IMG/VR virus record: IMGVR_UViG_3300042261_002390
Coordinates: 124,001-188,000 of that record
Length of the DNA stretch: 64,000 nt
Reading direction: 5' to 3' (one strand)
Positions 5,228-63,998 of the stretch are shown piece by piece. The translations under genes and the position numbers were made by a program. Every line of letters starts with the position of its first letter. Positions within the stretch are counted from its first letter, which is position 1. A model generated the notes under the pieces. That model was not told the DNA's origin. It did no database searches and worked only from the letters and a program-made list of their open reading frames with translations.

Positions 5228-5256
5228 AAAAGCGCAATAAGAATTGCGCTTTTTTT
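5228..5256 (+). terminator. Intrinsic terminator
   Basis: AAAAGCGCAAT-aaga-ATTGCGCT-TTTTTT hairpin plus U-tract. Confidence 0.85.
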
Positions 5257-5259
5257 ATC

Positions 5260-6554
5260 ATTATTGTTTTTCTTTTCATAAATTTTTAGTATTTATGTAT
5301 GTTATTACATACGAAATGTTGAAAGCAATTAAAATAAGATTATATTTAAATCAAGAACAAGTTAATTATGTGAATAATTTGCTTGGTACTTCTCGTTTTA
5401 TCTATAATAATTTACTTGCTTATAGGATTGAAAAATATGATAAAGATAAACGCAGTGTTTCTTTTGGAGAACTAGGTAAAAAACTAGTTGAATTAAAATC
5501 TGAACATGAATGGATAAAAAATAGTCATTCAAAAGTTTTGCAACAATCTATGATTAATTTAGATGTTGCATATAAATCGTTTTATAAAAACGGTAATGGT
5601 TTTCCTAAATTTAAATCAAAAAAAGACAATAAACAAAGTTGTAGATTTCCTTCTGATGCTATTGGTAGAATTAAAGGAAATAGAATAAATATCGTTAAAC
5701 AGCTTAAAGATATTCATTTTAAATGTAGCACTAAAGATGAAATATTTTTAAATTACAATCAAAAATTAATTAAATCTGCAACACTAGCAAAAACCAAATC
5801 TAATTGTTATTATTTGAGCATTTTAATTGAAGATAATAGAACAAAGCAATTACCAAAAACAGATAATATTATTGGTTTAGATTTGGGGATAAAGGATTTT
5901 ATTATAACTAGCGAAGGTGAAGTATTTGAGAATATTAAAATTAGACGAAATAATCAAAAGAAATTAGTTAGACTTAACAGACAATTATCAAAAAAAACTA
6001 ATGGCAGTAAGAACAAAAACAAAGCAAGAATTAGATTAGCAAAATTTCATGAGAAATTAAATAACAAAAAAGAAAATTACTTGCATTTAATTACTAATCG
6101 ATTACTTAATGAAAATCAAGTTATAGTTATTGAAGATTTAAATGTAAAAGGAATGTTAAAAAATCATTGTTTAGCAAAATCAATACAAGAGTTAAGTTTA
6201 AATAGGTTTAAGAATATTTTAGTTTATAAATGTCATTGGTATGGAAGGGATTTAGTCGAGATTGACAGATATTATCCTTCTTCAAAGTTATGTAATTATT
6301 GTGGCTATAAGAATGATGAACTGACATTGAAAGACAGAGAATGGGTTTGTCCAGAATGTAAAACTCATCATGATAGGGACATAAATGCTGCAATTAATAT
6401 AGGAAAAGAAGGAAAAAGAATTTTATTAATTAGAGAAAATAAAATAAATATAGGGTTGAGTTCACCCGAATTAACGCCTTTGGACAGTCGTGGTTACACA
6501 CTGGATGAATTAGGAAAAGAATGTAATTATAACGAATTTATGTGATTACGGAAC
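5260..6554 (+). mobile_element. Non-autonomous IS605/IS1341-like element (tnpB only); ends approximate
   Basis: tnpB with no adjacent tnpA, lying between a terminator and the promoter of the next gene. Confidence 0.6.
5316..6545 (+). CDS. tnpB: IS200/IS605-family RNA-guided endonuclease TnpB
   Basis: N-terminal MLKAIKIRLY HTH, FPKFKSKK, RuvC-I GLDLGIKD, RuvC-II IEDL, zinc finger CNYC/CPEC, RuvC-III DRDINAAINI. Likely start is the ATG at 5316. Confidence 0.95.
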   Translation: MLKAIKIRLYLNQEQVNYVNNLLGTSRFIYNNLLAYRIEKYDKDKRSVSFGELGKKLVELKSEHEWIKNSHSKVLQQSMINLDVAYKSFYKNGNGFPKFKSKKDNKQSCRFPSDAIGRIKGNRINIVKQLKDIHFKCSTKDEIFLNYNQKLIKSATLAKTKSNCYYLSILIEDNRTKQLPKTDNIIGLDLGIKDFIITSEGEVFENIKIRRNNQKKLVRLNRQLSKKTNGSKNKNKARIRLAKFHEKLNNKKENYLHLITNRLLNENQVIVIEDLNVKGMLKNHCLAKSIQELSLNRFKNILVYKCHWYGRDLVEIDRYYPSSKLCNYCGYKNDELTLKDREWVCPECKTHHDRDINAAINIGKEGKRILLIRENKINIGLSSPELTPLDSRGYTLDELGKECNYNEFM

Positions 6555-6583: not shown

Positions 6584-9500
6584 ATGACATACGAAGAATT
6601 CAGAGAAAAATTTTTACCAGAATTTAGTAAAATCAGGACATTTGCGGGAAAAATTAGATATGCAGACCAATACTTAACTAAAATAGGTGCTGGAACTGGT
6701 CGTGCTGTTTATGATATTGACGGCAGTAAGGTATTAAAAGTTGCTAAAAATCCCAAAGGCGTTGCTCAAAATGAAGTTGAAGCACCACTTGGTGATGATT
6801 ATTATATTAAAGATGTTGTTACTGAAGTATTTGATAGTGCCGATGATGATAGCTGGATAATTGCAGAAAAAGCAAAAAAGGTTAATGAAAGTAGAATTAA
6901 ACAATTAACTGGTATACCAAGTTTGGTTAGATTATATACATTTTTAAAATATGTTTATGAACAAAGTGTAAAACCAAATCGAAATAACCCAACTAGATTA
7001 AATCAAAATGAAATAGATTTTTTTTATGAAAATGAATTTGCTTCTGGTTTGGCTGATTTAATTGGTAGTTATGAACATTCGTATGGTGATATGGGTAGAC
7101 CAAGCAGTTATGGCGAAGTTTTGCGTAATGGTCAACCAACAATAGTTTTAACTGATTATGGATTGAACGATGAGGTATATTCACAACACTATGATAGAAG
7201 TAGAAAAAAAGGGTATCGTATGTATGAATTATATCAGTTTGCTGATGGTAATGATGACATGCTTTCAGATATTGGTAATACCGGGGAAGTTCGTCATGTT
7301 ATGTGGGCACAAGTACCATATAGCGTAGGTGATGGTGATGGCGTTATTAATGAAGAATTTGTACATTTTGTATCGAATCGTGACTATTATCCTGAAAAAC
7401 CTTTGGAAACAATGCCATATTTGGTTGAAAATTTCCACGAATGTATTAATAATTTGAAGGAAGCATTAAATGTTGCAAAGGATAAGAAACATTTTTATAG
7501 TAATTTATTGAAACTCCAAGAATATTTAACTAATCAAGGTTGGTTTAATAGAGAACCACTTGGTGAGTTATACGAGGTTGATAATAAAAAAATTAATGAA
7601 AGTTTAGATATTAAATTAGCTAATGAGGTTGCATTGGAAGTTGCACAGATTAAAGGTTTTAATGAGCCTAAATACTTAGGTTCTGGCAATTTTGGTGTTG
7701 CTTATGATATTGGTGATGGTAAGGTGTTAAAAATTACTACAGACCATACGGAAGCTAATGAAAATATAGGTTTATTAGGTAAACCATTAAAATATATTGC
7801 AAAACCATTTAATGTATATAAAATCGAATCAGAAAGTGGTAGAGTTGATGACGATACTTATGCAATAGTACTTGAAAAACTTCAAACTGATGTTGAAAAA
7901 TTTACTAAATTAAGACAGCGATTAGATTATGCGTTTGGTAAAATATTGGATTTAAGTCTTGCTGATGTTTTGGCTGATTATGTTGCTGATTATATTAATC
8001 CCGGGGATATGAGAAGAATTGAAGCTTATATGAAGAAGAACCCAATAGATGCTGAATTTTTCTATAGTTTGATTCATATTGCTGATGAAGCTAAATCATA
8101 TGGTGTTGATAGTATTGATTACATTAACCCGAAAAATCTCGGCTATATGCCTAGTGGAGCGATTGGTTTTTTTGATGTTGGATTTGGTAATGCATTCGTA
8201 CAACCCGACATACCAAAAATGAGTATTGGCGAAGATGGCGCAGCTAAATTTTCACAGACCGATTCTATTGGTCGTGATGATTTTCCAACATATGACCAAG
8301 ATAACGGCGATGACCCTATTGAGAACAATCTTGACGCTAATTCGGCAAATTATGTTGACGAAAGAGAAATGAAGTTCATGCCAAAAAGTAAGGGTGTTGA
8401 AGTTAAGAAGAAATGTAGATTAGGCGGGTTAGGTAATACTAGTGCAGCATGTAATCAAGGAGATATTAGTAATTTGAATATCAGTAGATTAGATGAAATT
8501 AATATCAGACATAATGAAACCGTTTGGGGTTGGGTATCACCAAATAACGAATTTATACGTGTTCCTAAACTAAATCATAGGGGATATATCATGAGAGTAT
8601 ATAAGGACTATGAATATAGCTGGGATTATGATAGAGTGTTTGATAAAGCAATTGAAGACGGATGGGTTAGAGTAATTTATGAATATTTCTCAGATAAATT
8701 TCGTGGCGAATTATCATTAAACGGATACGATAAAGATAGGGTGATTTCCGTATTTAAAACAATGTTTTATGATTTAGTTAAATATGGTGGTAATAGCATT
8801 TATTTGGAATATGAAAATCCTAAAGGCTATGATAGTTTTTATGCTGGCAATACTGAAGGTAGAAAAAAATTAAATGATTTTATTGGTATTACTGAAACAA
8901 TTAATGAAGAAATCCATGCTGATGATGCTAAGGAATATAACGATGCTATGCAAGCTATGCTTGATGGTAAAAAGGATGTATCAACAATTGCATTTAAAAT
9001 CAGACCTGCTTTGCGTGATGTTGTAACTCAAAATGATTTTGGTTTAATCCCGGTACAACAGGAAAGAAGTAATGTCGATATGAATATCGTTTATCGTAAA
9101 ACTTCAAGGGGTGAAGCTAATGCAAAACGATTGTATCAAATTATGATGAAACATGGTGGTTATGCTGCAGACCAAACACCTGATGAAGCACGTGAGATTG
9201 GTATGTTATTGGATTATAGTAATGATTCGATTAATCAATATATTGAAAATAAGTATGTTAATAAAATAGATGAAGGTATTTTTGACGATTTTGAAACTAG
9301 ATTCAGAGCACATAAAATAAGTAATGTTGAAAATGTGATATACCGTGAGTCTGATGGATATTTTATAATAAAAAATCCGAAATCATTACAACATATTACT
9401 CATAACGTTCGTGGTGTTATTACATCTTCAGGTGATTTATATGTGGAAAATTATGTGAAAAAAGTGCATAGTACTATTTTAATGATACTGAGTGATTTAG

Positions 9501-11950
9501 GTATCATTCAATATGTTGAGGGATGGACACGAGTGCTGCCGAATGAATTTATTACAGTTACACGGTATAAAAACACTAATAATTTTTTTGCTGGTGAATC
9601 AAATATAATGTTAAGCCAAGATGATAAAAGAATTTCAGGAAATTGGAATGGTGTAGCTGATTATCAAGAATCTTTAAGACTGTTTCAAAGTTATATGAAT
9701 AAGGCTAAAGATAAGAATCCTGACATAAATTTTTATCCTGAAAAAATAAACGATTATGATGATTCATACAATGGATTGAAGGGCTTATATTTTGAAGGTG
9801 TCGGTGATACTTATGTTGAAAAGAAATTTGGCATTGAACCTGAATTTTCTGATTTTGAAGATAAATATAATTCAGCACAAAATTATAAAGATAGGGACAA
9901 GGTGGTATATAACGATGGTAAAGGTCTTGTCATAATAAAAAATCCTAAGAATTTAGATAATATCGGATATGGCGTTAGAGGTATTATTGACAAATATGGT
10001 AATTTATATGTTGAACAAAAATCGAAAGTAATACATGATAAGATTTTGAAGATATTAACTGAATTGGGATTAATTAAATATAATATAAATTGGCGATATG
10101 AGATTCCTACTGAGTTTATTACTGTGCATAGAAATTATCACAAGAATCAATTTTTACTTGGTGATTCTAATGACATGATGATTCCTGATGAATATAGGAG
10201 TGAATATCAAAAGGATATTTTGCCTAGTTTTTCTGAAGCAGAACCAGTATTTAATACATTTATTGAAAAAGCAAAACAAGTTAATCCTGATATTGATTTC
10301 AGTACAGACCTTATTGATGGCTATGTAAAATTCAATACTAATGAGGGTGTTGGTGACAAATATGCTGAGAAGAAATTTGGTGTTGAGCCAGAATTTTCTG
10401 ATTTTGAAAAAAGATATGCATCAAAACAGAATGTTGAACAAGAAGAGGTGGTATACCAAGATAATGAATTGATTTTAATTAAAAACCCTAAATCATTGGA
10501 ACATATCGGCTCAAATGTAAGAGGTGTTGTTGATAAAGAAGGTAATTTGTATGTTGAACAAGAAGTTGGAAATATACATGAAGATATTTTAAAAATACTA
10601 AATAGTTTAAACTTAATTAGATATCAAAATAATTGGGAAAGGAAAATTCCTTCAAATTATATAACAGTTCAAAGATATTATAATACTGATTTATTTTATT
10701 TGGGCGAATCAAATGAAACAATGCTCCCTGATGAAGATAGATTTGAAGACCATAATGCAGCTAGATATGTAGATGCAAAACCAGTGTTTCAACAGTTCAT
10801 TCATCGTGCAAAACAAAAGAATCCTAAAATTAAGTTTATTAATGATATGTTGACTGTTTATCAGGATTATAATGAATCAGTGGAAAAATTTGATAATAAT
10901 TTTGGTTTGTATTCAGAAAATACTATCTTTGCTGATGAAAATTTAGATGAAACTTTAGGTGAGTTGGATAAATACTACGTGAAAACTGGTATATATGACG
11001 ACGAAGACCGTGATGTGATTTTATCGATAACGAATGGTGATAATTGGACAAAGCTTATTGCTGACATGTATTATTATCTTGGAGATAGGTATAATAAGCA
11101 AATGGTTGAACCGAGAAAATTAAATGATAATGAAATCACGTATCTTAAAAATACACATGAATTATTGAAGGCGTATGATAAAAATGTATTACCAATTCAT
11201 GACTTATTTGCTCGTGAACATAATGCACATGCTCTTGAAAAAATGAATGACCTTAATACTAGGAATGTTATACTGAAGAAACTTAAACAGATTCCAAGTG
11301 TATATCTTCGTAATTTAAGAGCTGATTTGAGAAAGGAAAGAGACCATTATGAATTTGATAGTTTGTTGAAAAACATTAATTCAATTCTTAATTCAATGAG
11401 AGTTCTGAATAATGTTAATGCTGAAAGAGCTAATTTAATTTTAAAGAAAGTTTTTTCAAATGAGAACGATACTTTTGAAAAGATTAAAGAAAGATTTGAT
11501 AATATATTTATACCATATTTGTCACAAGATGAACCGATTGAGGAAATTTTAGATAATATTAAGTATTGGAAAGATGAAGTGGAATTGTTATATAATAAGA
11601 ACGACGTTGTTGCTGTTAAAATAATGAGTGCTGAAGCAATGACAGCATTTGGTTGTAGTTCACAATGGTGCTTTGCAAGAGATACTGGTTGGTGGGATAA
11701 TTATGCTGAATATGGGTTTGCAACAATTGTATATAACTTTAATTTAGACCCTAGTGACCCTAAAAGAATGGTCGTGGTTTTAGATAATGGTAATGTATAT
11801 AACATGTATAATGAGTACATGGATGAAGGTATTGAATATTTGGAAGAAATTGGTGTATATGATTATATGCCGACATCGGATGAATATGAACACGAGTTTG
11901 ATAGCGAAGTGAATGAAAATATTGAAGAGGCTAGAAAATTAATAATTTGA
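6584..11950 (+). CDS. 1788-aa polyvalent protein: two protein-kinase-like domains, three ~180-aa repeats, C-terminal PcfJ-like domain
   Basis: Kinase 1: IGAGTGRAVY..VLKVAK..E..DMGR..LTDYG. Kinase 2: LGSGNFGVAY..VLKIT..E..DYINPKNLG..FFDVG. C-terminal AMTAFGCSSQWCFA..WWDNY resembles PcfJ-like domains. Confidence 0.8.
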   Translation: MTYEEFREKFLPEFSKIRTFAGKIRYADQYLTKIGAGTGRAVYDIDGSKVLKVAKNPKGVAQNEVEAPLGDDYYIKDVVTEVFDSADDDSWIIAEKAKKVNESRIKQLTGIPSLVRLYTFLKYVYEQSVKPNRNNPTRLNQNEIDFFYENEFASGLADLIGSYEHSYGDMGRPSSYGEVLRNGQPTIVLTDYGLNDEVYSQHYDRSRKKGYRMYELYQFADGNDDMLSDIGNTGEVRHVMWAQVPYSVGDGDGVINEEFVHFVSNRDYYPEKPLETMPYLVENFHECINNLKEALNVAKDKKHFYSNLLKLQEYLTNQGWFNREPLGELYEVDNKKINESLDIKLANEVALEVAQIKGFNEPKYLGSGNFGVAYDIGDGKVLKITTDHTEANENIGLLGKPLKYIAKPFNVYKIESESGRVDDDTYAIVLEKLQTDVEKFTKLRQRLDYAFGKILDLSLADVLADYVADYINPGDMRRIEAYMKKNPIDAEFFYSLIHIADEAKSYGVDSIDYINPKNLGYMPSGAIGFFDVGFGNAFVQPDIPKMSIGEDGAAKFSQTDSIGRDDFPTYDQDNGDDPIENNLDANSANYVDEREMKFMPKSKGVEVKKKCRLGGLGNTSAACNQGDISNLNISRLDEINIRHNETVWGWVSPNNEFIRVPKLNHRGYIMRVYKDYEYSWDYDRVFDKAIEDGWVRVIYEYFSDKFRGELSLNGYDKDRVISVFKTMFYDLVKYGGNSIYLEYENPKGYDSFYAGNTEGRKKLNDFIGITETINEEIHADDAKEYNDAMQAMLDGKKDVSTIAFKIRPALRDVVTQNDFGLIPVQQERSNVDMNIVYRKTSRGEANAKRLYQIMMKHGGYAADQTPDEAREIGMLLDYSNDSINQYIENKYVNKIDEGIFDDFETRFRAHKISNVENVIYRESDGYFIIKNPKSLQHITHNVRGVITSSGDLYVENYVKKVHSTILMILSDLGIIQYVEGWTRVLPNEFITVTRYKNTNNFFAGESNIMLSQDDKRISGNWNGVADYQESLRLFQSYMNKAKDKNPDINFYPEKINDYDDSYNGLKGLYFEGVGDTYVEKKFGIEPEFSDFEDKYNSAQNYKDRDKVVYNDGKGLVIIKNPKNLDNIGYGVRGIIDKYGNLYVEQKSKVIHDKILKILTELGLIKYNINWRYEIPTEFITVHRNYHKNQFLLGDSNDMMIPDEYRSEYQKDILPSFSEAEPVFNTFIEKAKQVNPDIDFSTDLIDGYVKFNTNEGVGDKYAEKKFGVEPEFSDFEKRYASKQNVEQEEVVYQDNELILIKNPKSLEHIGSNVRGVVDKEGNLYVEQEVGNIHEDILKILNSLNLIRYQNNWERKIPSNYITVQRYYNTDLFYLGESNETMLPDEDRFEDHNAARYVDAKPVFQQFIHRAKQKNPKIKFINDMLTVYQDYNESVEKFDNNFGLYSENTIFADENLDETLGELDKYYVKTGIYDDEDRDVILSITNGDNWTKLIADMYYYLGDRYNKQMVEPRKLNDNEITYLKNTHELLKAYDKNVLPIHDLFAREHNAHALEKMNDLNTRNVILKKLKQIPSVYLRNLRADLRKERDHYEFDSLLKNINSILNSMRVLNNVNAERANLILKKVFSNENDTFEKIKERFDNIFIPYLSQDEPIEEILDNIKYWKDEVELLYNKNDVVAVKIMSAEAMTAFGCSSQWCFARDTGWWDNYAEYGFATIVYNFNLDPSDPKRMVVVLDNGNVYNMYNEYMDEGIEYLEEIGVYDYMPTSDEYEHEFDSEVNENIEEARKLII
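9269..10880 (+). repeat. Three tandem diverged ~540-nt domain repeats inside the giant ORF
   Basis: Each copy has IKNPK.L..I...VRG.I...G.LYVE...H..IL..L...W....P...ITV.R...G(E/D)SN. Copies 2 and 3 share EGVGD.Y.EKKFG.EPEFSDFE. Confidence 0.9.
10901..10931 (+). promoter_or_regulatory. Bacteroidota-type promoter embedded in the giant ORF
   Basis: TTTG-N19-TATCTTTG, located in an interdomain linker. Confidence 0.45.
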
Positions 11951-12101
11951 TAAAATTCAAAAAAAGAATATCAATAGAGATTTGAGAAAGTTTAAATACT
12001 TGACATCTATGGGATATACTATATTGTATCTATGGGAATATGATTTAAAACACAATTTAAATGAATGTAAAAATAAATTAAATAGACTGTTATATGAATA
12101 A
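11946..12101 (+). pseudogene. C-terminal relic of a Vsr/DUF559-like endonuclease
   Basis: Start-less frame FDKIQKKNINRDLRKFKYLTSMGYTILYLWEYDLKHNLNECKNKLNRLLYE*. The RD..K...L...GY.IL.LWE.D pattern is typical of Vsr-like nucleases. Not in the ORF track. Confidence 0.75.
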
Positions 12102-13719
12102 GATAAAAAATTTTATAGCTGATTTAAAAACCAAACCGTTTATCAAATCAATGATAAATGATTTGAATGCTGAAGTATATGTTGTTGGTGGTGCAACTAG
12201 AGACCTTATTCTCAATAAAAATAACAAGGATATTGATTTATTAATTAGAAAAATACCAATCGATGTGTTAATATCTCATTTAAAAAATTATGGTAAATTA
12301 GATATTGTGGGTAAATCATTTGGAGTTATTAAGTTTATTGATTCAGATGGCGTTGATTATGATATAGCATTGCCTCGCCGAGAAAAACCAACAGGTGAGG
12401 GTGGACATAAAGACTTTGAAATTCAGAGCGATGAAAATTTACCGATTGAAGTGGATTTGAGTAGAAGGGACGCTAAACTTAATGCAATGGCAATTGATTT
12501 AAACAACGAAAAATTTGTTGACCCTTTGGGTGGTTTGGACGATATTCAAAATAAACAAATATCTGCTGCAAATCCTAATGCATTTTCAGATGACCCACTT
12601 CGTATGTTGAGAATGATTGGTTTTGCAAGTCGATTTGGATTTACGATTGAACCCAGAACAATGGAAATGATTCAAAAAAATGCTGAAAGTATTAAGAGAA
12701 TACCTGCTGAAAGAATTATCGAAGAATTCAAGAAGATTATCGAAAAGGGTAATCCTAGAATTGGTGTTGAACTTTTAGTATCTACCGGGTTATTTAAACA
12801 AATATTTGGTAATGAAATCAAGCAATCACAAATAGATAAGCGTGATTTTGAAAGCGTTAAATCTATGGCTGAGTTTTTATTTTTGATGATGTATGATGTT
12901 GTTCAAAATCCGTCACAATTTTATTTAAGTAAATTTAGTACGGAAGATGCTTTAAGGGATAAAAACTATAAAGAAATAAAAGCATTGGAGTTGGCATTTG
13001 CAAATACCAATAATAATCCAGTGGCTACAAGGTCAGTTGCACATAACATGTATGTAATGTCACCTGTTTCTTTGGAGAGTTCAATTCTTCCTTCTGAGAT
13101 TAAAACTGCAGCACAGGATTTGCTTTCAGGTAGATATCCTAAAACAGTTAATGAATTGGCTGTTAATGGCGGTGATTTAATGCAGTTAGGATTAAAAGGT
13201 AAAGAAGTTGGTGATATGCAAAAGTCATTATTGCTTAAAGTTTATGGCGATAAAGTTCGTAACGATAAGAATAGTTTGCTTGCTGTTGCTAAAGGTGAAG
13301 AACCAAACAACTTAAGTGAGGTTGATGCTAATATTGATAAGAATGTTCTTTATAGTGCAGTTGTGCTTGACGATGAGTCACGTAGCAAATTATTGAAAGT
13401 GGTTCAACCTATGATACCTGATGGTTGGGAAGTTATAGCGCATCACATGACAATCAAAATGGGTGCAATAAACCCCGAAAATCGGGGTGATTTGAATACC
13501 GAAGTAACGCTTGATGTTATTGATTACGCTATCGATGATATGGCATTTGCTGTTGGTGTAAGTGGTTATCCATCCAACAATAAGAAGCCTCATATTACTA
13601 TTGCAATTAATAGACTTGAAGGTGCTAAACCAGTAATGTCTAATAATTTAACTGATTGGAAACCATTAGGTTTTCCATTAAAACTGAAAGGAATTGTTAC
13701 TGAAATTAAACGAAATTAA
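12094..13719 (+). CDS. cca: CCA-adding/poly(A) polymerase-family nucleotidyltransferase fused to a C-terminal 2H phosphoesterase
   Basis: VVGGATRD..KDID, DLSRRD..NAMA, DPLGG..D, FSDDPLRMLR. The C-terminal domain has two HxT motifs (HHMTI, PHITI). Confidence 0.88.
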   Translation: MNKIKNFIADLKTKPFIKSMINDLNAEVYVVGGATRDLILNKNNKDIDLLIRKIPIDVLISHLKNYGKLDIVGKSFGVIKFIDSDGVDYDIALPRREKPTGEGGHKDFEIQSDENLPIEVDLSRRDAKLNAMAIDLNNEKFVDPLGGLDDIQNKQISAANPNAFSDDPLRMLRMIGFASRFGFTIEPRTMEMIQKNAESIKRIPAERIIEEFKKIIEKGNPRIGVELLVSTGLFKQIFGNEIKQSQIDKRDFESVKSMAEFLFLMMYDVVQNPSQFYLSKFSTEDALRDKNYKEIKALELAFANTNNNPVATRSVAHNMYVMSPVSLESSILPSEIKTAAQDLLSGRYPKTVNELAVNGGDLMQLGLKGKEVGDMQKSLLLKVYGDKVRNDKNSLLAVAKGEEPNNLSEVDANIDKNVLYSAVVLDDESRSKLLKVVQPMIPDGWEVIAHHMTIKMGAINPENRGDLNTEVTLDVIDYAIDDMAFAVGVSGYPSNNKKPHITIAINRLEGAKPVMSNNLTDWKPLGFPLKLKGIVTEIKRN

Positions 13720-13755
13720 GTCTAAATAAGTAGTTGAATTCATTAAAGATATTTT

Positions 13756-14394
13756 ATGATTAGCAGAAATATATATTTTGAAGAAAACAAGTTTAAAAGA
13801 TTTGGTGATTATATTGAGTATCATTTACTTAATGAGATAGCTAAGAAATATGGTATAACTAACGAAAATGGCGTTGAAGTAAACGTGTTTAATGTAAATC
13901 GAAAGGGGAAAAAATTTAAGCCATTCGATATTTTTGTTAGGAACATAAAAAAAAGAATTGAAGTAAAAGGTGATTACATGACAGTTCGATTGGGTAATAT
14001 TATTGTTGAAACTTATGGACACGATGGATTTTCAGGGATATCTACCACAAAAGCAGATTATTGGGTTTTTGTTACTGGCTTTTATAAAATTTGGATAACA
14101 CCAAATGAATTAAAAAAATACATTACATTAAGAAATTTAAGCGTCGGAGATGTTAGAGGCAATGGGGATAATTATACAAAAAAAGCATATAAAGTAAGAC
14201 ATGACGATTTTATTGACTATATTTTAAATCTTAACGATAAAAATATTGGACTAGTTGTTCCGATAGATAGAAATAGTCCGTTATATTGGCATAAATGTAT
14301 TCCTTTTAATTATAGTCTTAGAAAATATCATCAAGAGGCTAATATTTTTGAAGAACGTAAGGATGAATTATTTAAAATAAAAAGAAGTAGATGA
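13756..14394 (+). CDS. PD-(D/E)xK endonuclease-like protein
   Basis: E..L...FDIFV...IEVKGD...GNIIVE...SGI.TTKADYW. Confidence 0.7.
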   Translation: MISRNIYFEENKFKRFGDYIEYHLLNEIAKKYGITNENGVEVNVFNVNRKGKKFKPFDIFVRNIKKRIEVKGDYMTVRLGNIIVETYGHDGFSGISTTKADYWVFVTGFYKIWITPNELKKYITLRNLSVGDVRGNGDNYTKKAYKVRHDDFIDYILNLNDKNIGLVVPIDRNSPLYWHKCIPFNYSLRKYHQEANIFEERKDELFKIKRSR

Positions 14395-14420
14395 AAAAAA
14401 GATTAGTAGCATTTGAATGA
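14391..14420 (+). pseudogene. Orphaned original 5' end of the HAD gene (MKKRLVAFE*)
   Basis: ATGA overlap with the upstream stop. The peptide aligns with RKRLIAIDFD at the start of 15493..16098. Confidence 0.65.
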
Positions 14421-14422
14421 TA

Positions 14423-15436
14423 TTAAATATATTTAAAAAAATATCCTTTAGTGTGATTTCTTTCACCACTAATAACTCTTCTAATACATTTGTCTTTAAT
14501 TTTCATAATATCACATAATTCATGTATATTATTGAAAGTGCGAATGTATTGTTTTGTATTATAGTCAAACATTTCTATTTTACGTAGCTTAGATAATCTA
14601 TTATATGTGCCTTGTCGATATTCTCTTAATGTTTGAAATATTTCATATTTTCTGCTTAGTCTTAATGTTTCAGAATCATAATACATTTCATTTTTTATTA
14701 TATTGAGGTCGTGATATGAATAATAAAAAATTTTTGAGATGTAATTATTACTTGACTGATATACTGTATTAGTTAATTTAGTGTTATTCGATATGTGATA
14801 TCTTAAAAAATCATGTTTAATTTGTTTTAATAATGCCTCCGACCCGATTATCTGAAATCTTAGTCTTCCTTTTTTTTGATTTTTTTCGTTAGTAATTGAC
14901 CCGTCACCATCAAAAACACCTCTAATAAAATGCCAAAAATATTCATTAGGTATATTTGGCATTTCACAGGTGAACGATTTGTTGGGATATATGCCCAATT
15001 TATTTAAATCATCAACAATTTCTTTAGATGCTATTTGTAATGAATATCTAGTATATGTTTTATTTGTTCTTTTATCAAAAATATCGTATTTGGCTAATTT
15101 ATGTTCAGACTTGAGTTCTCGTTTAAATATTTCAACAAGCTCACTGTCTTTAGATGTAAAAGTTAATTTAAATTTATTAACATATCCGTCAGATATGATT
15201 AATCCTAGTATGTAAGCTTTATTTTTATTGTTGATTTCTTTAAAAAAATTTATATCAATGCTGTGTTTTCTATTATTGCCGTCGTGAGATTTATTATCTA
15301 ACGTATATCCATATTTTTTCAACCGATTTCCGATTGTTGATGGTGATACGTCACCAATTAAGTTAGCTATTTTATTTAATGAGTATTTATCTTTAAAATA
15401 ATAATTAAATATTTGTTCTATGTTTATGTTTTTCAT
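14423..15436 (-). CDS. Free-standing LAGLIDADG homing endonuclease with HTH/NUMOD1-like domains
   Basis: AYILGLIISDG and HFIRGVFDGDGSI motifs, NUMOD1-like C-terminus (IRTFNNIHE...TKGYFFKY), own minus-strand GTATTTAT at 15455-15462. Confidence 0.9.
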   Translation of the reverse strand: MKNINIEQIFNYYFKDKYSLNKIANLIGDVSPSTIGNRLKKYGYTLDNKSHDGNNRKHSIDINFFKEINNKNKAYILGLIISDGYVNKFKLTFTSKDSELVEIFKRELKSEHKLAKYDIFDKRTNKTYTRYSLQIASKEIVDDLNKLGIYPNKSFTCEMPNIPNEYFWHFIRGVFDGDGSITNEKNQKKGRLRFQIIGSEALLKQIKHDFLRYHISNNTKLTNTVYQSSNNYISKIFYYSYHDLNIIKNEMYYDSETLRLSRKYEIFQTLREYRQGTYNRLSKLRKIEMFDYNTKQYIRTFNNIHELCDIMKIKDKCIRRVISGERNHTKGYFFKYI

Positions 15437-15492
15437 AAATTTGCATTTTTAAAAATAAATACTTTGAGATTTAAAATTATTGGGTTTTGATT

Positions 15493-16098
15493 ATGGAAAA
15501 AAATAAAAATACTCGAAAACGTCTAATAGCCATCGATTTTGACCAATGTTTGGTCAACACCCCTGAAGAAATTCAAGGTAAGAAAACTTGGGAAGAAGTT
15601 AAAGGTGTTCCTTATCCGCATAATGGATGGTGGGGTAGGAAAGAAAGCTTAGATTTGGATGTTTTTGATATAAAACCATATCCTAACGTACTGTCTGTTT
15701 TAAGAAAAGAAAGCAGTAGAAATGATACGTATGTTATTGTTTTAACAGCAAGAATGGAAAAATTGCGTCCATATGTGCAAGCAGTTCTTGATGCAAATAA
15801 CATTAGGGTTGATAAATTGGATATGAAAAGTGATAATAAAACAAAGGGTGAAAGAATATTGGCATATTTAGCTGAGATGCCTGAAATAAAAGAAATTTCA
15901 GTTTTCGATGACCAAGAAAAACATCTTGATTCGTATCGTGAAATTATAGATAAACTACCTAAAGGTGTTAAATTGAATATTTTTAAAACTGATGAGGGTG
16001 TGATTAATTTAGTTGAATCAAAAAATAAACTCAATCATATTATTTCTGATGAAATTGAAAATTTTTTTGATTGTATTTATATTAAAAAAATTCTATGA
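15493..16098 (+). CDS. HAD-family phosphatase (Swiss-Army-knife RNA-repair HAD-like)
   Basis: IDFD..LVNTP, WW...ESL, VLTAR, K, VFDD motifs. Confidence 0.8.
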   Translation: MEKNKNTRKRLIAIDFDQCLVNTPEEIQGKKTWEEVKGVPYPHNGWWGRKESLDLDVFDIKPYPNVLSVLRKESSRNDTYVIVLTARMEKLRPYVQAVLDANNIRVDKLDMKSDNKTKGERILAYLAEMPEIKEISVFDDQEKHLDSYREIIDKLPKGVKLNIFKTDEGVINLVESKNKLNHIISDEIENFFDCIYIKKIL

Positions 16099-61689: not shown

Positions 61690-63084
61690 TTATTTTTCGT
61701 CGTCAGTATCTGCCCATTCAAGACCCGGACAGTAATCGGTGTAACTAGCACTAAAATATTCACCAAAAATACCTGTACTACCATAAATTCCACGACCGAT
61801 TGCACACAATCCACGCCAAACAGCCAATGCCAATGGTACTATAATTTTCATAGCAAACCAAATTGCAGGTTTAATCAAGATGTATAGGAAGCTGTATGCA
61901 ATACCCAATGCAACATATTTTATTGGGTAATATAACCAAATTAATGGCTCAACATACCAAACCTTTTTACCTGTTTTATACTTATTTACAATTTTTTGCC
62001 CGAAACCAATAATAAAGAAACCGATTAGATATGCAATACCAACAATTGATAATCCCGCTAAAACATAAACATACAATAACCAATTAGTTGCTGACCAGTC
62101 AATAACAATTGTTAATAGGTGTGCAATTAAATTCACTATAAAGAATGAGGCTGTGAGAAAAAATAACGTAATCAATCCACCAACGAACTGTTTAGTTCTT
62201 CTGATGATGTTCTTCCAATCTAAATCAAATGTGAATGCATCAACAAAAAAATCAATTAGTTTATTCAATGCATTATTAATTGGTTTCATTCTAGCATCCC
62301 ATTTTTCTTTCTTGATTGCTTCTTTACGTTCAATTTCTCGTTGTTTAAGAAGACGTTTTTGGTAATCTTCTCGTTTTTTCGCATTAATTTGCGTACTCCA
62401 TGCGTTCCACTTTAATTCAAGTTCTTTTCTTTTTCCCAAGTATTCTTTTTGATTAGTACCATATTCTAAGCCATACTTTTCAAGCAGAAAATAATTTAGA
62501 ATATCGGTGTCTTTGTTTTTTAAATAAAACTTGGCTGTTGTAGGCAATTTTAAATTACCCCTGTAATAGTACTCGTAGACTTCTTCTTCTTCAATACTTA
62601 ACAACCAGCTATTAATGAATTTTTCCAGTGACCAGATTAAAATTCTTGGGAAAAGCATGATTAGCGAATATATAACTTCCCCAATCACTTTAAATGGAAC
62701 AACTAAAACTGAAAAAATCAGCAACCAAAAGTACGGACAGCCATTTTGCATAGTTTTAGGTGTCGGAGCATTTGAGCCAAGCACGTATTTCACCAAACGA
62801 TAGTGCCATGATTTCATGCTTACACGCATCAATTTAGGCTTTTCTGCCTGAACAATGTACGCATCATCGCCAGTTTGAAGGTAAATTTTACTGTTTAATG
62901 ATAACGAACCAACAATAGTTTCAACTACTTTAATATAGTAGCCTTCATAGTCTTTGTAAAGGAAGCCTTTACAATACAAGATGTTAGGTTTGTTGAATTC
63001 AACAACCTTATTCATCAATAACTCTAATTTTTCAAGTTTGTCGGTAATGTTTCCGACAACAGCTTTTTTAGTTATTTTTCCCAT
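61690..63084 (-). CDS. Multi-pass membrane protein
   Basis: Several TM segments, SWHYRL..., CPYFW, C-terminal YCP. Confidence 0.75.
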   Translation of the reverse strand: MGKITKKAVVGNITDKLEKLELLMNKVVEFNKPNILYCKGFLYKDYEGYYIKVVETIVGSLSLNSKIYLQTGDDAYIVQAEKPKLMRVSMKSWHYRLVKYVLGSNAPTPKTMQNGCPYFWLLIFSVLVVPFKVIGEVIYSLIMLFPRILIWSLEKFINSWLLSIEEEEVYEYYYRGNLKLPTTAKFYLKNKDTDILNYFLLEKYGLEYGTNQKEYLGKRKELELKWNAWSTQINAKKREDYQKRLLKQREIERKEAIKKEKWDARMKPINNALNKLIDFFVDAFTFDLDWKNIIRRTKQFVGGLITLFFLTASFFIVNLIAHLLTIVIDWSATNWLLYVYVLAGLSIVGIAYLIGFFIIGFGQKIVNKYKTGKKVWYVEPLIWLYYPIKYVALGIAYSFLYILIKPAIWFAMKIIVPLALAVWRGLCAIGRGIYGSTGIFGEYFSASYTDYCPGLEWADTDDEK

Positions 63085-63580
63085 TTTGAAATTGATTTAA
63101 TTTATTAATAATTTTATCTTTAATTCCTGTTTGTTTAATACCTTCAAGAGCACGTGGTGTTCTGACAAAATTCTCATCCGGGAGAAAATTCGATAGATTT
63201 AAATCATCGACAGCCACATAATGTTGAACATTGTTCGTTTTAACATATTCAAGTATTTCACTTGCACGACAATTTTCTAATTCACTCAAACTTTTGAACA
63301 ATGTACCCCAATGATTGGGTGTGATGTCTGATATTGTACAATTAATGTTATTAACTGCAAATATCTGATTCAACATGTTCAAATCATATTCATTTTTCCA
63401 ATCACTACTTAAAACAACAATAGGATTGGTTGCTTCAATAATTTCGTTAAAAACTTTAACACATTTCGCATCAAACAAGTATGAATTGTACAATGGACAC
63501 CACTTCTTAGGGTTCACGTTAAATTGAATCAATGTGGCTAAAACACCATCGATGTCGAGCATGAGGTATGGTTTATTCAT
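63068..63580 (-). CDS. HAD-family protein (Swiss-Army-knife RNA-repair HAD type 2)
   Basis: LDIDGVL, VVLSSDWK, RASEI..Y, YVAVDD. Confidence 0.85.
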   Translation of the reverse strand: MNKPYLMLDIDGVLATLIQFNVNPKKWCPLYNSYLFDAKCVKVFNEIIEATNPIVVLSSDWKNEYDLNMLNQIFAVNNINCTISDITPNHWGTLFKSLSELENCRASEILEYVKTNNVQHYVAVDDLNLSNFLPDENFVRTPRALEGIKQTGIKDKIINKLNQFQNGKNN

Positions 63581-63998
63581 CGAGTTCATTTAATAATTTT
63601 CTTACATTGTCCAGATGTTTATTATCCATCGGCTTACCGCAAGTGTTCAATTTAATGAAGGTTTCGTAAATGTCTTTTTTCGACGGATTTCTTAATGTTC
63701 CATATACGATTCCGTGTTCTTCAAATTTATGTCTATCTCTGAAAGATAATTCAGAAAACTTATAACCTTTGTATTTGAATCGGTCTTCATAGAACTCACA
63801 AATTGCGGTAAGTCGTTGTTTACCGTCGATAATTTCAAATGCTTCGGCACGTTTATCGGAATATGGTCGCTCAACGAAAACAAATTTACCAATATCAACA
63901 TTGTTGAAAATGCTATCGATTAACGCAATCTTATCGCTGAGTTCCCAAACATGTTCACGCTGATACTCAACGTCAAAATCAACACCATTAAAATGTAC
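63573..63998 (-). CDS. DUF262 (GmrSD N-terminal/ParB-like) protein, 5' end outside window
   Basis: Own translation: YQREHVW..DKIALIDSI...EIIDGKQRLTAI..F...IYETFIKLNTCGKP. Not in the ORF track because it lacks a start in the window. Confidence 0.85.
   Translation of the reverse strand, partial: VHFNGVDFDVEYQREHVWELSDKIALIDSIFNNVDIGKFVFVERPYSDKRAEAFEIIDGKQRLTAICEFYEDRFKYKGYKFSELSFRDRHKFEEHGIVYGTLRNPSKKDIYETFIKLNTCGKPMDNKHLDNVRKLLNELDE

What the first reader, a model, noticed from the sequence alone, without database searches (positions are those of the whole stretch)
12094..16098. tRNA 3'-end repair module: CCA enzyme fused to a 2H cyclic phosphodiesterase, plus a HAD phosphatase
Seen: a class II nucleotidyltransferase with no HD domain but a C-terminal 2H domain (HHMTI/PHITI), and an RNA-repair-type HAD downstream. 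Known: E. coli-type CCA enzymes use an HD domain to heal 2',3'-cyclic phosphate ends, and 2H domains open cyclic phosphates. Inferred: 2H opens, HAD dephosphorylates and the NTase re-adds CCA. This would counter host toxins that clip tRNA acceptor ends. A second repair-type HAD lies at 63068.
Basis: partly seen in the sequence, partly recalled or inferred. Interest (0 to 1): 0.7.

Follow-up and report, generated by a model that had tools for sequence, protein, structure and literature searches.

The report
Phage tRNA-end repair enzyme trio
An uncultivated jumbo phage carries a CCA-adding enzyme fused to a small cyclic-phosphodiesterase domain, with a phosphatase gene just downstream; related phages keep these three activities together or fuse them into one protein, which points to a viral kit for mending clipped tRNA 3' ends, though no enzyme activity has been tested.

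Summary
ORF 12094-13719 encodes a class II CCA-type nucleotidyltransferase with no HD domain. Its last about 130 residues form a compact 2H phosphoesterase (H451-x-T453, H500-x-T502). The model has pLDDT 96, and its nearest folds are CNPase and the cyclic-phosphodiesterase domains of fungal and plant tRNA ligases. ORF 15487-16098 is a HAD_SAK_1 phosphatase, and 63068-63589 (minus strand) is a HAD_SAK_2.

- Two probably selfish nuclease genes lie between the fused enzyme and the HAD.
- The upstream 1788-aa ORF matches the N-terminal part of giant relatives (one Pfam-scanned example also has an ART-PolyVal domain) that carry the NTase and 2H domain at their C-terminus.
- The compact 2H domain is a large, unannotated viral family, with 1194 representative clusters.
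- NTase, 2H and HAD occur fused in every combination, including about 700-aa trifunctional proteins in unrelated genome contexts.

Adjacency within this clade mostly reflects general synteny. The fusions are the real evidence that the three enzymes work together.

Most likely mechanism: the 2H domain opens a 2',3'-cyclic phosphate, the HAD removes the remaining phosphate, and the NTase rebuilds CCA. Substrate, reaction order and the counter-defence role are inferred, not shown. I rate it a new variant of a known kind.

The parts
12094..13719 (+). Gene for a 541-aa fusion protein (P0001): class II CCA-type nucleotidyltransferase plus a compact 2H cyclic phosphodiesterase
   Evidence: ORF list. 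Pfam PolyA_pol and PolyA_pol_RNAbd score above their cut-offs. phrog_2244 'tRNA nucleotidyltransferase', E 2.7e-56.
12094..13308 (+). NTase head, neck, body and tail (residues 1-405). Motif A is GGATRD (32-37) with DIDLL (46-50), motif B is RRD (124-126), motif D is DDPLRMLR (166-173). There is no HD domain.
   Evidence: The best NCBIfam match is NF009814 'CCA tRNA nucleotidyltransferase', E 6.3e-43, covering profile positions 15-391 of 396. The residues are invariant in 43 homologues.
13321..13716 (+). Compact 2H phosphoesterase domain (residues 410-541) with H451-x-T453, H500-x-T502 and the family motif G-x-K-P-x-M-S-N (510-517)
   Evidence: Invariant columns in 66 sequences. 56 of the 66 hit PF08302 tRNA_lig_CPD. 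Model pLDDT 96.3. Nearest folds are CNPase and the Trl1 CPD.
13756..14394 (+). 212-aa protein (P0003) with an invariant D58...E69-x-K71 motif. It is probably a PD-(D/E)xK-fold nuclease and an optional, possibly selfish insert between the 2H and HAD genes.
   Evidence: Alignment with the homologues at the same position in L009 and L010. Atlas neighbours carry NOV_C or PDDEXK_14 (a lead only). Present in only 23 of 71 related loci, or 17 of 56 non-redundant ones.
14423..15436 (-). LAGLIDADG homing endonuclease with a NUMOD-like DNA-binding tail. It is a mobile insertion, not part of the pathway.
   Evidence: Pfam LAGLIDADG_3 E 1.3e-8; phrog_4645 'endonuclease' E 3e-43. Absent at this position in L010 and L011, present in L009.
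15487..16098 (+). HAD_SAK_1-family phosphatase (P0002). HAD motifs: I D17-F-D19-Q-C, II T87, III K120, IV D141-D142. Family signature GWWGRxES. The likely start is the ATG at 15493.
   Evidence: Pfam score 30.6 bits against a 25.6 cut-off. Invariant columns. Model pLDDT 93.9. The best solved match is Pnkp1 of the Pnkp1/Rnl/Hen1 complex, and T4 Pnkp phosphatase is also listed.
6584..11950 (+). 1788-aa repetitive giant protein (P0263), the split-off N-terminal part of a polyvalent-type protein. In relatives it continues directly into the NTase and 2H domain.
   Evidence: BLASTP against P0127 and P0135 gives 38-51% identity in several blocks, E down to 1e-61. Those relatives carry ART-PolyVal, PolyA_pol and the compact 2H. 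In 41 of 80 related loci the giant and the NTase form one ORF.
63068..63589 (-). It is not linked to the module and overlaps a GmrSD_N/DUF262 gene by 17 nt.
   Evidence: Pfam HAD_SAK_2 E 3e-22; the neighbouring ORF is GmrSD_N, E 1.7e-17.

Best explanation
This is a phage-encoded kit for healing and rebuilding RNA 3' ends, most probably tRNA acceptor ends. It consists of three enzymes.

1. A compact 2H cyclic phosphodiesterase of the tRNA-ligase/CNPase type opens a 2',3'-cyclic phosphate left by a metal-independent RNase. By analogy with those relatives, the product should be a 3'-OH/2'-phosphate end.
2. The HAD_SAK_1 phosphatase removes the remaining monophosphate to give a clean 2',3'-diol.
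3. The class II nucleotidyltransferase, to which the 2H domain is fused, re-adds the missing C, C or A.

The kit does with a 2H domain plus a HAD what the E. coli multifunctional CCA enzyme is reported to do with its HD domain. In this phage lineage the kit is the C-terminal end of a giant polyvalent-type protein that has been cut into separate genes to varying degrees. Here it is split as giant | NTase-2H | HAD, with two selfish nuclease genes inserted before the HAD.

Shown here: domain identities, intact catalytic residues, and the recurrent fusion and linkage of the three domains. Inferred: the substrate (tRNA), the order of steps, the regiochemistry, and the biological role as counter-defence against RNases that clip acceptor ends.
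For: **Domain identities.**
- NTase: catalytic motifs are present and invariant in 43 homologues. The best family match is a full-length CCA enzyme model, E 6.3e-43 over positions 15-391 of 396.
- 2H: the two HxT motifs are invariant in 66 sequences. The model has pLDDT 96.3. Z is 13.5 to CNPase and 11.4 to fungal Trl1 KIN-CPD, against about 7 to Acb1 or LigT. The top Swiss-Prot model matches are the CPD domains of the S. pombe and A. thaliana tRNA ligases.
- HAD: all four HAD motifs are conserved. It scores above the HAD_SAK_1 cut-off. Its best solved matches include Pnkp1 of the Pnkp1/Rnl/Hen1 repair complex and T4 Pnkp phosphatase.

**Coupling of the three domains.**
- Fusions exist in all combinations: NT-C2H 62, C2H-NT-HAD1 17, C2H-NT 6, NT-HAD1 3, C2H-HAD1 1, NT-C2H-HAD1 1 (Pfam confirms P0143).
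- The compact 2H is also fused to a PNK-type AAA_33 kinase (P0184).
- 52 of 56 non-redundant related viral loci with enough flank have both the 2H and the HAD next to the NTase.
- L088, L089 and L091 share none of ten neighbouring genes with this window yet keep the trio.
- A trifunctional homologue (P0073) lies within 8 kb of RlaP, an AAA_33 kinase, cREC_REC and an RNase_T-like gene.

**Context.**
- The genome has only two tRNA genes, neither encoding a complete CCA. A role limited to maturing a large phage tRNA set is therefore unlikely.
- The reference title for the E. coli CCA enzyme's HD domain activities was seen. Its full content is from my own knowledge of Yakunin et al. 2004.
Against: - No biochemical data exist for any member of the compact 2H family or of HAD_SAK_1.
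- The NTase scores far below every NCBIfam equivalog cut-off (147 bits against 290 for the best). CCA, CC-only, A-only or poly(A) specificity is therefore open.
- Within this clade the whole 20-kb block is syntenic. Unrelated neighbours are found in 62-70 of 80 loci, so adjacency by itself says little.
- Polyvalent proteins string together functionally unrelated effectors. Iyer et al. 2017 argued that the 2H domains in polyvalent proteins act as RNases or degrade signalling nucleotides rather than repair RNA (PMC5512222).
- In cultured phages (RsoM2USA, Atu_ph07, DAC19) the compact 2H stands alone, with no NTase or HAD within 5-6 kb.
- HAD motif I reads DFDQC instead of the usual DxDxT, although Cys recurs there in relatives.
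- I found no defence system in the papers searched that clips CCA ends and is countered by a phage CCA enzyme.
Confidence: 0.55

Rival explanations
1. General RNA-break healing for ligation. The 2H and HAD prepare the 3' ends of RNAs broken anywhere, for example tRNAs cut in the anticodon loop, for sealing by the phage's RNA ligases. This would resemble T4 Pnkp/Rnl or fungal Trl1. The fused NTase would only fill in lost nucleotides, as proposed for RlaP, and CCA ends would not be the specific target.
For: - The genome encodes two RNA_ligase-family proteins (E 1.4e-31 and 9.5e-14; one is Rnl2-like) and an AAA_33 kinase.
- The compact 2H is closest to the CPD of tRNA ligases that act in splicing and ligation.
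- It is fused to a PNK-type kinase in P0184.
- The P0073 locus has RlaP, a kinase and cREC nearby.
Against: - The ligase genes lie 65-90 kb from the module.
- No homologue of this phage's ligases or kinase is found within 10 kb of the NTase in any of 80 related loci.
- The recurrent fusion partner is a full-length CCA-type NTase with a tRNA-binding body and tail, not a ligase.
Confidence: 0.2
2. Independent effectors on one string. The NTase simply matures or maintains CCA on phage and host tRNAs. The 2H domain (with the HAD) is a separate counter-defence enzyme that destroys 2',3'-cyclic or 2'-5'/3'-5' cyclic-oligonucleotide immune signals, like Acb1 or viral 2',5'-phosphodiesterases. The fusion would reflect only the bead-on-a-string nature of polyvalent proteins.
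For: - The module is part of a polyvalent-type protein that carries ART-PolyVal in relatives.
- Iyer et al. 2017 proposed RNase or anti-signalling roles for polyvalent-protein 2H domains.
- Relatives add a second 2H domain that hits Pfam Acb1 and 2_5_RNA_ligase2 (P0137, P0144).
- Acb1 is a weaker fold match, about Z 7.
- Both phage tRNA genes lack an encoded CCA.
Against: - The compact domain is much closer to the tRNA-ligase CPD and CNPase (Z 13.5 and 11.4) than to Acb1 (Z 7.2).
- It gives no Pfam Acb1 hit itself.
- Relatives that have an Acb1-like domain carry it in addition to the compact one, not in its place.
- The trio persists as a stand-alone trifunctional protein outside any polyvalent context.
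- 2H-HAD and 2H-kinase fusions fit RNA end chemistry.
Confidence: 0.15
3. The NTase is not a CCA-adding enzyme. It would be a poly(A) or other tailing polymerase that marks host RNAs for decay or modifies another nucleic acid, with the 2H and HAD conditioning those ends.
For: - The NTase is below the cut-off of every CCA equivalog model, and PcnB also matches at E 4e-29.
- Solved poly(A) polymerases match only slightly worse than CCA enzymes.
- Motifs A-D are shared by all class II enzymes (my own knowledge of the family).
Against: - The only full-length match, head to tail over 15-391 of 396, is the CCA model NF009814. PcnB and A-adding models match only the head and neck.
- The tRNA_NucTran2_2 tail is weakly present, E 3.2e-5.
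- The loop between motifs A and B is not shortened relative to a solved CCA enzyme (alignment). This argues against a CC-only enzyme, but it is an inference.
Confidence: 0.1

Closest known systems
E. coli multifunctional CCA-adding/repair enzyme (Cca, NTase + HD domain; Yakunin et al. 2004 JBC 279:36819, reference seen; NCBIfam NF008137)
   Same: A class II NTase is joined in one polypeptide to a phosphoesterase that could clear 2',3'-cyclic and monophosphate blocks from the end the NTase must extend. The NTase half matches, E 1e-32.
   Different: There is no HD domain. End clearing is divided between an unrelated 2H domain and a separate (in relatives, fused) HAD phosphatase. The element is viral and tied to a giant polyvalent-type protein.
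CPD domain of fungal and plant tRNA ligases (Trl1, AtRNL) and vertebrate CNPase (2H superfamily)
   Same: The fold is the same and both HxT motifs are present. Z is 13.5 to CNPase and 11.4 to C. albicans Trl1 KIN-CPD. The top Swiss-Prot model hits are tRNA ligase CPDs. Pfam tRNA_lig_CPD is the only family hit. A kinase-CPD fusion also exists in the viral family (P0184).
   Different: It is about 125 aa instead of about 200, with only about 50 residues between the two His. It falls below the Pfam cut-off (19.4 against 23 bits). Sequence identity is 12-19%. It is joined to a CCA-type NTase or a HAD rather than to an RNA ligase.
T4 Pnkp/Rnl and bacterial Pnkp1-Rnl-Hen1 RNA repair systems
   Same: A HAD phosphatase heals 3' ends. 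The best solved structural match of the HAD here is Pnkp1, T4 Pnkp phosphatase is also matched, and phrog_415 'polynucleotide kinase' hits it.
   Different: There is no kinase or ligase in the module or within 10 kb in 80 related loci. An NTase takes the place of the ligase as the end-using enzyme.
'Swiss Army Knife' RNA-repair HAD families (Pfam HAD_SAK_1 and HAD_SAK_2) and jumbo-phage RNA repair inventories (Iyer et al. 2021, PMC7824862)
   Same: The HAD is a HAD_SAK_1 member. The 2021 survey lists CCA-adding enzymes, 2H phosphoesterases and stand-alone SAK-HADs among jumbo-phage RNA-repair components.
   Different: In the passages I retrieved, that survey treats the three as separate components. 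I saw no statement of an NTase-2H-HAD fusion or triad, nor of this compact 2H family. The 2016 source paper (Burroughs and Aravind) could not be read, so prior description there cannot be excluded.
Polyvalent proteins of phages and conjugative elements (Iyer et al. 2017, PMC5512222)
   Same: Giant multidomain proteins with ART-PolyVal, and probably kinase-PolyVal-like modules, carry the NTase-2H at their C-terminus in relatives.
   Different: The 2017 paper never mentions CCA enzymes (0 occurrences) and argued that its 2H domains do not act in RNA repair. Here the giant protein is split from the NTase-2H by a stop, a 143-nt gap and a frame change.
Acb1 anti-CBASS 2H phosphodiesterase
   Same: Both are small phage 2H enzymes. 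Some relatives of P0001 carry an extra Acb1-like domain.
   Different: The fold match is much weaker, Z about 7, and this domain gives no Pfam Acb1 hit.

Membership tests
Class II (PolyA_pol-type) tRNA nucleotidyltransferase superfamily | Head domain with GGxxRD and DxD carboxylates (motif A), RRD (motif B) and (E/D)DxxR (motif D); Pfam PF01743 and PF12627 above their cut-offs | tested here: met
   GGATRD 32-37, DIDLL 46-50, RRD 124-126 and DDPLRMLR 166-173. PF01743 scores 74.4 bits against 23, and PF12627 scores 71.1 against 22. The residues are invariant in 43 homologues.
CCA-adding enzyme proper, as opposed to CC-adding, A-adding or poly(A) polymerase | Adds exactly C, C, A to tRNA 3' ends; matches an equivalog model above its cut-off | tested here: inconclusive
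   The best match is NF009814, full length, at 147 bits against a cut-off of 290. PcnB scores 101.7 bits on the head and neck only. The activity cannot be tested with these tools.
E. coli-type multifunctional CCA/repair protein | HD phosphohydrolase domain following the NTase | tested here: not met
   No HD family hit at E<=10 on residues 240-420 or 400-541. NF008137 aligns only over positions 2-208 of 409.
2H phosphoesterase superfamily | Two H-x-T/S motifs on a pseudo-twofold alpha+beta fold | tested here: met
   H451/T453 and H500/T502 are invariant in 66 sequences. The model has pLDDT 96.3. All significant PDB matches are 2H enzymes.
tRNA-ligase CPD / CNPase clade of 2H enzymes (Pfam PF08302) | Closest in sequence and fold to Trl1-CPD/CNPase; hydrolyses RNA>p to a 2'-phosphate | tested here: inconclusive
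   On fold, the criterion is met: Z 13.5 and 11.4, and the top AFDB hits are tRNA ligases. On Pfam, this protein scores 19.4 bits, below the 23-bit cut-off, although 56 of 66 family members hit PF08302 at E<=0.01. Product regiochemistry cannot be tested here.
Acb1 anti-CBASS phosphodiesterase (PF23474) | Pfam Acb1 match; closest fold to Acb1 | tested here: not met
   No Acb1 hit at E<=10. Z is about 7.2, against 13.5 for CNPase.
HAD superfamily, HAD_SAK_1 family (PF10307) | Motifs I (DxDx[TV]), II (S/T), III (K) and IV (DD); Pfam score above the cut-off | tested here: met
   D17/D19, T87, K120 and D141/D142 are conserved. Position 5 of motif I is Cys, as in several relatives. The score is 30.6 bits against 25.6. 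The model has a Rossmannoid HAD fold, pLDDT 93.9.
Polynucleotide 3'-phosphatase function (T4 Pnkp / Pnkp1-like) | Dephosphorylates 2'/3'-phosphate RNA ends | not testable with these tools
   Support is indirect only: the best PDB fold match is Pnkp1 (E 1.2e-4), but generic HADs score nearly as well. There is also a weak profile hit to Pnkp1, E 0.039.
Polyvalent proteins (Iyer et al. 2017) | Giant multidomain protein with PolyVal-type effector domains; delivered with the DNA | tested here: inconclusive
   Relatives P0127 and P0135 carry ART-PolyVal at 33.4-33.6 bits against a 31.2 cut-off, together with NTase and 2H. The window's own giant ORF is homologous to their N-terminal parts but has no Pfam hit itself. 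Only Atlas features suggest it is kinase-PolyVal or T7-kinase-like. Packaging and injection cannot be tested here.
Ligase-centred RNA repair operon (RNA ligase + kinase + phosphatase 'syntax') | RNA ligase (ATP-grasp or RtcB) in the same neighbourhood | tested here: not met
   There is no RtcB in the genome. The RNA_ligase-family genes lie 65-90 kb away. No homologue lies within 10 kb in 80 related loci (this used phmmer with this phage's own ligases, so sensitivity is limited).

The most novel reading that the evidence does not exclude
The NTase-2H-HAD trio is a previously unrecognised payload of injected polyvalent proteins. On this reading the phage delivers, or makes very early, a self-contained tRNA 3'-end repair machine that neutralises host or competitor systems attacking the CCA end or acceptor stem. 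The compact, roughly 125-aa 2H domain, which has more than a thousand unannotated viral clusters, would be a new cyclic-phosphodiesterase family specialised for tRNA 3' termini.
Probability: 0.2. Interest if true: 0.8.

Novelty: new variant of a known kind. Interest (0 to 1): 0.6.

Why it matters
Phage counter-measures against tRNA-directed immunity are known mainly as spare tRNAs and as the T4 kinase/ligase repair of anticodon breaks. A viral machine that cleans and rebuilds the acceptor end would be a third route.

It would imply that attacks on the CCA end are a common enough defence to select for such a machine across a large clade of uncultivated jumbo phages.

The finding also assigns a testable function to three poorly understood things:
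- a large unannotated family of small viral 2H proteins;
- the never-assayed HAD_SAK_1 family;
- one end of the enigmatic giant polyvalent-type proteins.

It offers a natural analogue of the E. coli CCA/HD repair enzyme built from different parts. The roughly 700-aa trifunctional relatives would be convenient single-protein reagents for tRNA end repair.

Tried and rejected
**Searches that found nothing or could not run**
- Megablast of the 4-kb region against GenBank phages: no match.
- The search for related loci with the single protein: no relatives. It succeeded only with an alignment of close NTase domains.
- Profile search of the 2H alignment against PDB sequences: only noise, best E 0.019 to interferon gamma. 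The 2H identity therefore rests on structure prediction and on Pfam.
- The key comparative paper, Burroughs and Aravind 2016, is not held, so I could not check whether the fusion is already described there.
- Literature searches for a phage CCA enzyme countering a defence system found nothing relevant.

**Uninformative results**
- Pfam on nine pieces of the giant ORF: nothing.
- The promoter and terminator scan gave chance-level counts.
- No tRNA or any Rfam family lies in the window.
- The genome has no RtcB and no LigT-type 2H.

**Ideas rejected**
- That conserved gene order in the 80 loci proves functional linkage. A control showed unrelated neighbours are conserved just as often.
- That the 212-aa gene between the 2H and the HAD is a core pathway member. 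It is present in only about 30% of loci.
- That the HAD_SAK_2 at 63068 belongs to the module. It is 47 kb away, on the opposite strand, and coupled to a DUF262/GmrSD_N gene.

**Not done**
- No protein-complex prediction was run, because the report does not claim that the proteins bind each other.

Full report
**1. What is at the coordinates.**

The window is bases 124001-188000 of a 246-kb, 31% G+C IMG/VR virus record. It is a jumbo phage with gp25-like and gp6-like baseplate genes a few kb downstream of the finding.

The region holds four genes:

| Coordinates | Strand | Length | Product |
|---|---|---|---|
| 12094-13719 | + | 541 aa | P0001, NTase fused to a 2H domain |
| 13756-14394 | + | 212 aa | P0003, PD-(D/E)xK-like |
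| 14423-15436 | - | 337 aa | LAGLIDADG homing endonuclease |
| 15487-16098 | + | 203 aa | P0002, HAD_SAK_1 phosphatase |

**2. The nucleotidyltransferase.**

Residues 1-405 hit PolyA_pol and PolyA_pol_RNAbd well above Pfam's cut-offs. They also hit the phage family 'tRNA nucleotidyltransferase' at E 2.7e-56.

The class II catalytic motifs are present: GGATRD/DID, RRD and DDPLRMLR. They are invariant in 43 homologues.

The only model matched from head to tail is NCBIfam NF009814, 'CCA tRNA nucleotidyltransferase' (E 6.3e-43, profile positions 15-391 of 396). PcnB, A-adding and E. coli-type models match the head and neck only. All scores are far below the curated cut-offs.

There is no HD domain. 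The enzyme is therefore a divergent class II NTase of CCA-enzyme architecture. Its nucleotide specificity is not established.

**3. The C-terminal domain is a genuine, compact 2H enzyme of the tRNA-ligase/CNPase type.**

- An exhaustive HMMER search with residues 405-541 found 1194 representative clusters at E<=1e-3.
- In an alignment of 66 diverse members, H451, T453, H500 and T502 (plus A486 and S516) are invariant. 56 of the 66 hit Pfam tRNA_lig_CPD and no other relevant family.
- The AlphaFold model is very confident, with pLDDT 96.3.
- Foldseek's significant PDB matches are all 2H enzymes, led by mouse CNPase.
- Realignment gives Z 13.5 to CNPase (125 of 132 residues at 2.3 A) and Z 11.4 to the Candida tRNA ligase KIN-CPD. 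Z is only about 6-8 to Acb1, LigT and other 2H proteins.
- Among Swiss-Prot models the top hits are the CPD domains of the S. pombe and A. thaliana tRNA ligases.

The domain is about 125 aa, against about 200 for those relatives. In GenBank phages it occurs in only eight records, always annotated 'hypothetical protein'.

**4. The HAD.**

- P0002 passes the HAD_SAK_1 cut-off.
- All four HAD motifs are conserved across 43 homologues, together with a family signature, GWWGRxES.
- Motif I reads DFDQC. Cys at the fifth position recurs in relatives.
- The model has pLDDT 93.9.
- Its best solved match is the phosphatase-bearing Pnkp1 of the Pnkp1/Rnl/Hen1 RNA repair complex, and T4 Pnkp phosphatase is also listed. 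Generic HAD phosphatases score almost as well, so this is only weak functional support.

**5. The two genes in between are probably passengers.**

The LAGLIDADG endonuclease is absent at this position in the close relative loci L010 and L011 and present in L009.

P0003 has an invariant D...ExK motif. Its nearest Atlas neighbours that carry any family carry PD-(D/E)xK families (a lead only). It occupies this slot in only 17 of 56 non-redundant related loci. I read both genes as selfish nuclease insertions.

**6. Comparative genomics and a necessary control.**

A scan of IMG/VR with an NTase alignment gave 344 relatives, of which the best 80 loci were fetched.

Profile searches of their ORFs show the order giant protein - NTase - compact 2H - (PD-(D/E)xK) - HAD almost everywhere, cut into genes in about 20 different ways. 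After collapsing to 60 NTase clusters at 90% identity, 52 of the 56 with at least 6 kb of downstream sequence have both the 2H and the HAD.

A control showed that unrelated neighbours of the window (a NUDIX gene, a glycosyltransferase-like gene, gp25 and others) are found in 62-70 of the same 80 loci. Adjacency in this clade therefore mostly reflects shared ancestry of a syntenic block.

The evidence that the three enzymes work together is instead the following.
- **Fusions in every combination.** Among the collected proteins there are NT-C2H 62, C2H-NT-HAD1 17, C2H-NT 6, NT-HAD1 3, C2H-HAD1 1 and NT-C2H-HAD1 1. Pfam confirms the 2H-HAD fusion P0143 and a kinase-2H fusion, P0184.
- **Persistence in unrelated contexts.** Loci L088, L089 and L091 share none of ten neighbouring genes with the window yet keep the trio, as three adjacent genes or as one ORF with the 2H domain first.
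- **An RNA-repair neighbourhood.** One trifunctional homologue lies within 8 kb of RlaP, an AAA_33 kinase, a cREC_REC gene and an RNase_T-like gene.

**7. The link to a giant polyvalent-type protein.**

The 1788-aa ORF immediately upstream (6584-11950) is homologous in several blocks, at 38-51% identity, to the N-terminal parts of 1700-2250-aa relatives. The C-terminal parts of those relatives are the NTase plus the compact 2H, and their middles carry ART-PolyVal.

In 41 of the 80 loci the giant and the NTase form one ORF. Here they are separated by a stop codon, 143 nt and a frame change.

The giant ORF has no Pfam hit. Its Gly-rich-loop modules resemble T7-kinase and Kinase-PolyVal clusters by Atlas features only.

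Iyer et al. 2017 describe polyvalent proteins as injected multi-effector proteins. They do not mention CCA enzymes, and they argued that polyvalent-protein 2H domains are RNases or anti-signalling enzymes (PMC5512222). This is the main reason to keep a rival reading alive.

**8. The rest of the genome.**

- Two RNA_ligase-family genes (one Rnl2-like), an ATP-dependent DNA ligase and an AAA_33 kinase exist, but they lie 65-90 kb from the module.
- There is no RtcB and no LigT-type 2H.
- Only two tRNA genes are present. Both are confirmed by Rfam, and neither encodes a complete CCA.
- None of this phage's ligase or kinase genes has a homologue within 10 kb of the NTase in the 80 loci.

**9. Mechanism.**

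The most economical reading has three steps:
1. The 2H domain opens a terminal 2',3'-cyclic phosphate. By analogy with Trl1-CPD and CNPase, the product would be 3'-OH/2'-phosphate; this is my own knowledge of those enzymes.
2. The HAD removes the monophosphate.
3. The NTase restores the missing CCA nucleotides.

This parallels the activities reported for the HD domain of the E. coli CCA enzyme (Yakunin et al. 2004; reference seen, content from my own knowledge).

I put this at about 0.55. The rivals are:
- general 3'-end healing that feeds the phage ligases (0.2);
- independent effectors, with the 2H and HAD acting on signalling nucleotides (0.15);
- a non-CCA tailing polymerase (0.1).

**10. 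Known or new.**

The components, and the general idea that jumbo phages carry CCA enzymes, 2H phosphoesterases and SAK-type HADs for RNA repair, are published (Iyer et al. 2021, PMC7824862). JGI's automatic names already read 'tRNA nucleotidyltransferase/poly(A) polymerase/2'-5' RNA ligase' for some relatives with classical 2H domains.

Four things I did not find described:
- the compact tRNA-ligase-type 2H family;
- its systematic triad and fusions with the NTase and HAD_SAK_1;
- the trifunctional proteins of about 700 aa;
- the attachment of this trio to polyvalent-type giants.

No cultured phage record covers 80% or more of P0001. I therefore rate it a new variant of a known kind, of above-average interest because it is directly testable.

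Noticed in passing
window 6584-11950 (+): The 1788-aa protein is built of repeated modules. At least two have a protein-kinase-like Gly-rich loop (for example GSGNFGVAYDIGDGKVLKIT at about residue 366). By Atlas features they resemble T7-kinase and Kinase-PolyVal clusters. There are also three copies of a module of about 170 aa that contains 'IIKNPKSL..VRG..GDLYVE'. No Pfam family matches.
   Followed up: partly
window 8300-8480 (residues about 572-632 of the giant ORF); also the N-terminus of P0056 and internal sites of P0127 and P0135: A conserved linker-like motif, 'NNLDANSxxY ... KKKCxLGGxGNTSxACNQGDIxNL', recurs at module boundaries in the giant proteins and just upstream of the NTase in P0056. 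It could be a processing site or a small Cys-containing element.
   Followed up: no
window 5244-6545 (+): A transposase gene (phrog_506, E 4.8e-118) sits between conserved genes just upstream of the giant ORF. Homologues occur in only 2 of 80 related loci, so it is a recent mobile insertion.
   Followed up: partly
window 2247-3026 (+): A NUDIX hydrolase gene is conserved a few kb upstream of the giant protein in 66 of 80 related loci. Whether it takes part in RNA-end or ADP-ribose chemistry with the module is unknown.
   Followed up: partly
window 63068-63998 (-), continuing to genome position 188364: The HAD_SAK_2 gene overlaps by 17 nt the end of a 263-aa GmrSD_N/DUF262 gene. It is followed by a 464-aa multi-pass membrane protein. 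This is an unexplained pairing of a 'repair-type' HAD with a ParB/DUF262-like domain.
   Followed up: partly
genome C1:82336-82534 (outside the window; locus L092 537-733): These are the only two tRNA genes of the record. One is called with the odd anticodon ATC, and the other has a CAT anticodon and a long variable arm. Neither has a complete encoded CCA; the second is followed by CCG.
   Followed up: partly
relatives P0021, P0137, P0144, P0082: Some relatives add a second, classical 2H domain (Pfam 2_5_RNA_ligase2 and Acb1) after or instead of the compact one. A single protein can therefore carry two different 2H enzymes.
   Followed up: partly
L010 10903-11271, L011 6881-7249; also L015, L029, L035; L097 1340-1768: A small receiver-like gene (Pfam Response_reg or cREC_REC) follows the HAD in a few relatives. 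Iyer et al. 2021 proposed this 'cRec' domain as a cyclic-phosphate-processing enzyme. It is absent from this window.
   Followed up: partly
genome C1:200873-204161 and 225380-226402 (outside the window): There is an ATP-dependent DNA ligase and two RNA_ligase-family genes. One is Rnl2-like. The other has an N-terminal HNH-like segment with a weak hit to IscB.
   Followed up: no
window 12080-12093 and other gene starts in the block: No Shine-Dalgarno-like sequence precedes the ATG of the NTase gene. A relative protein is labelled as coming from a Bacteroidales MAG, and the compact 2H occurs in Bacteroides phages. The host may be a Bacteroidota member, but this was not tested.
   Followed up: no
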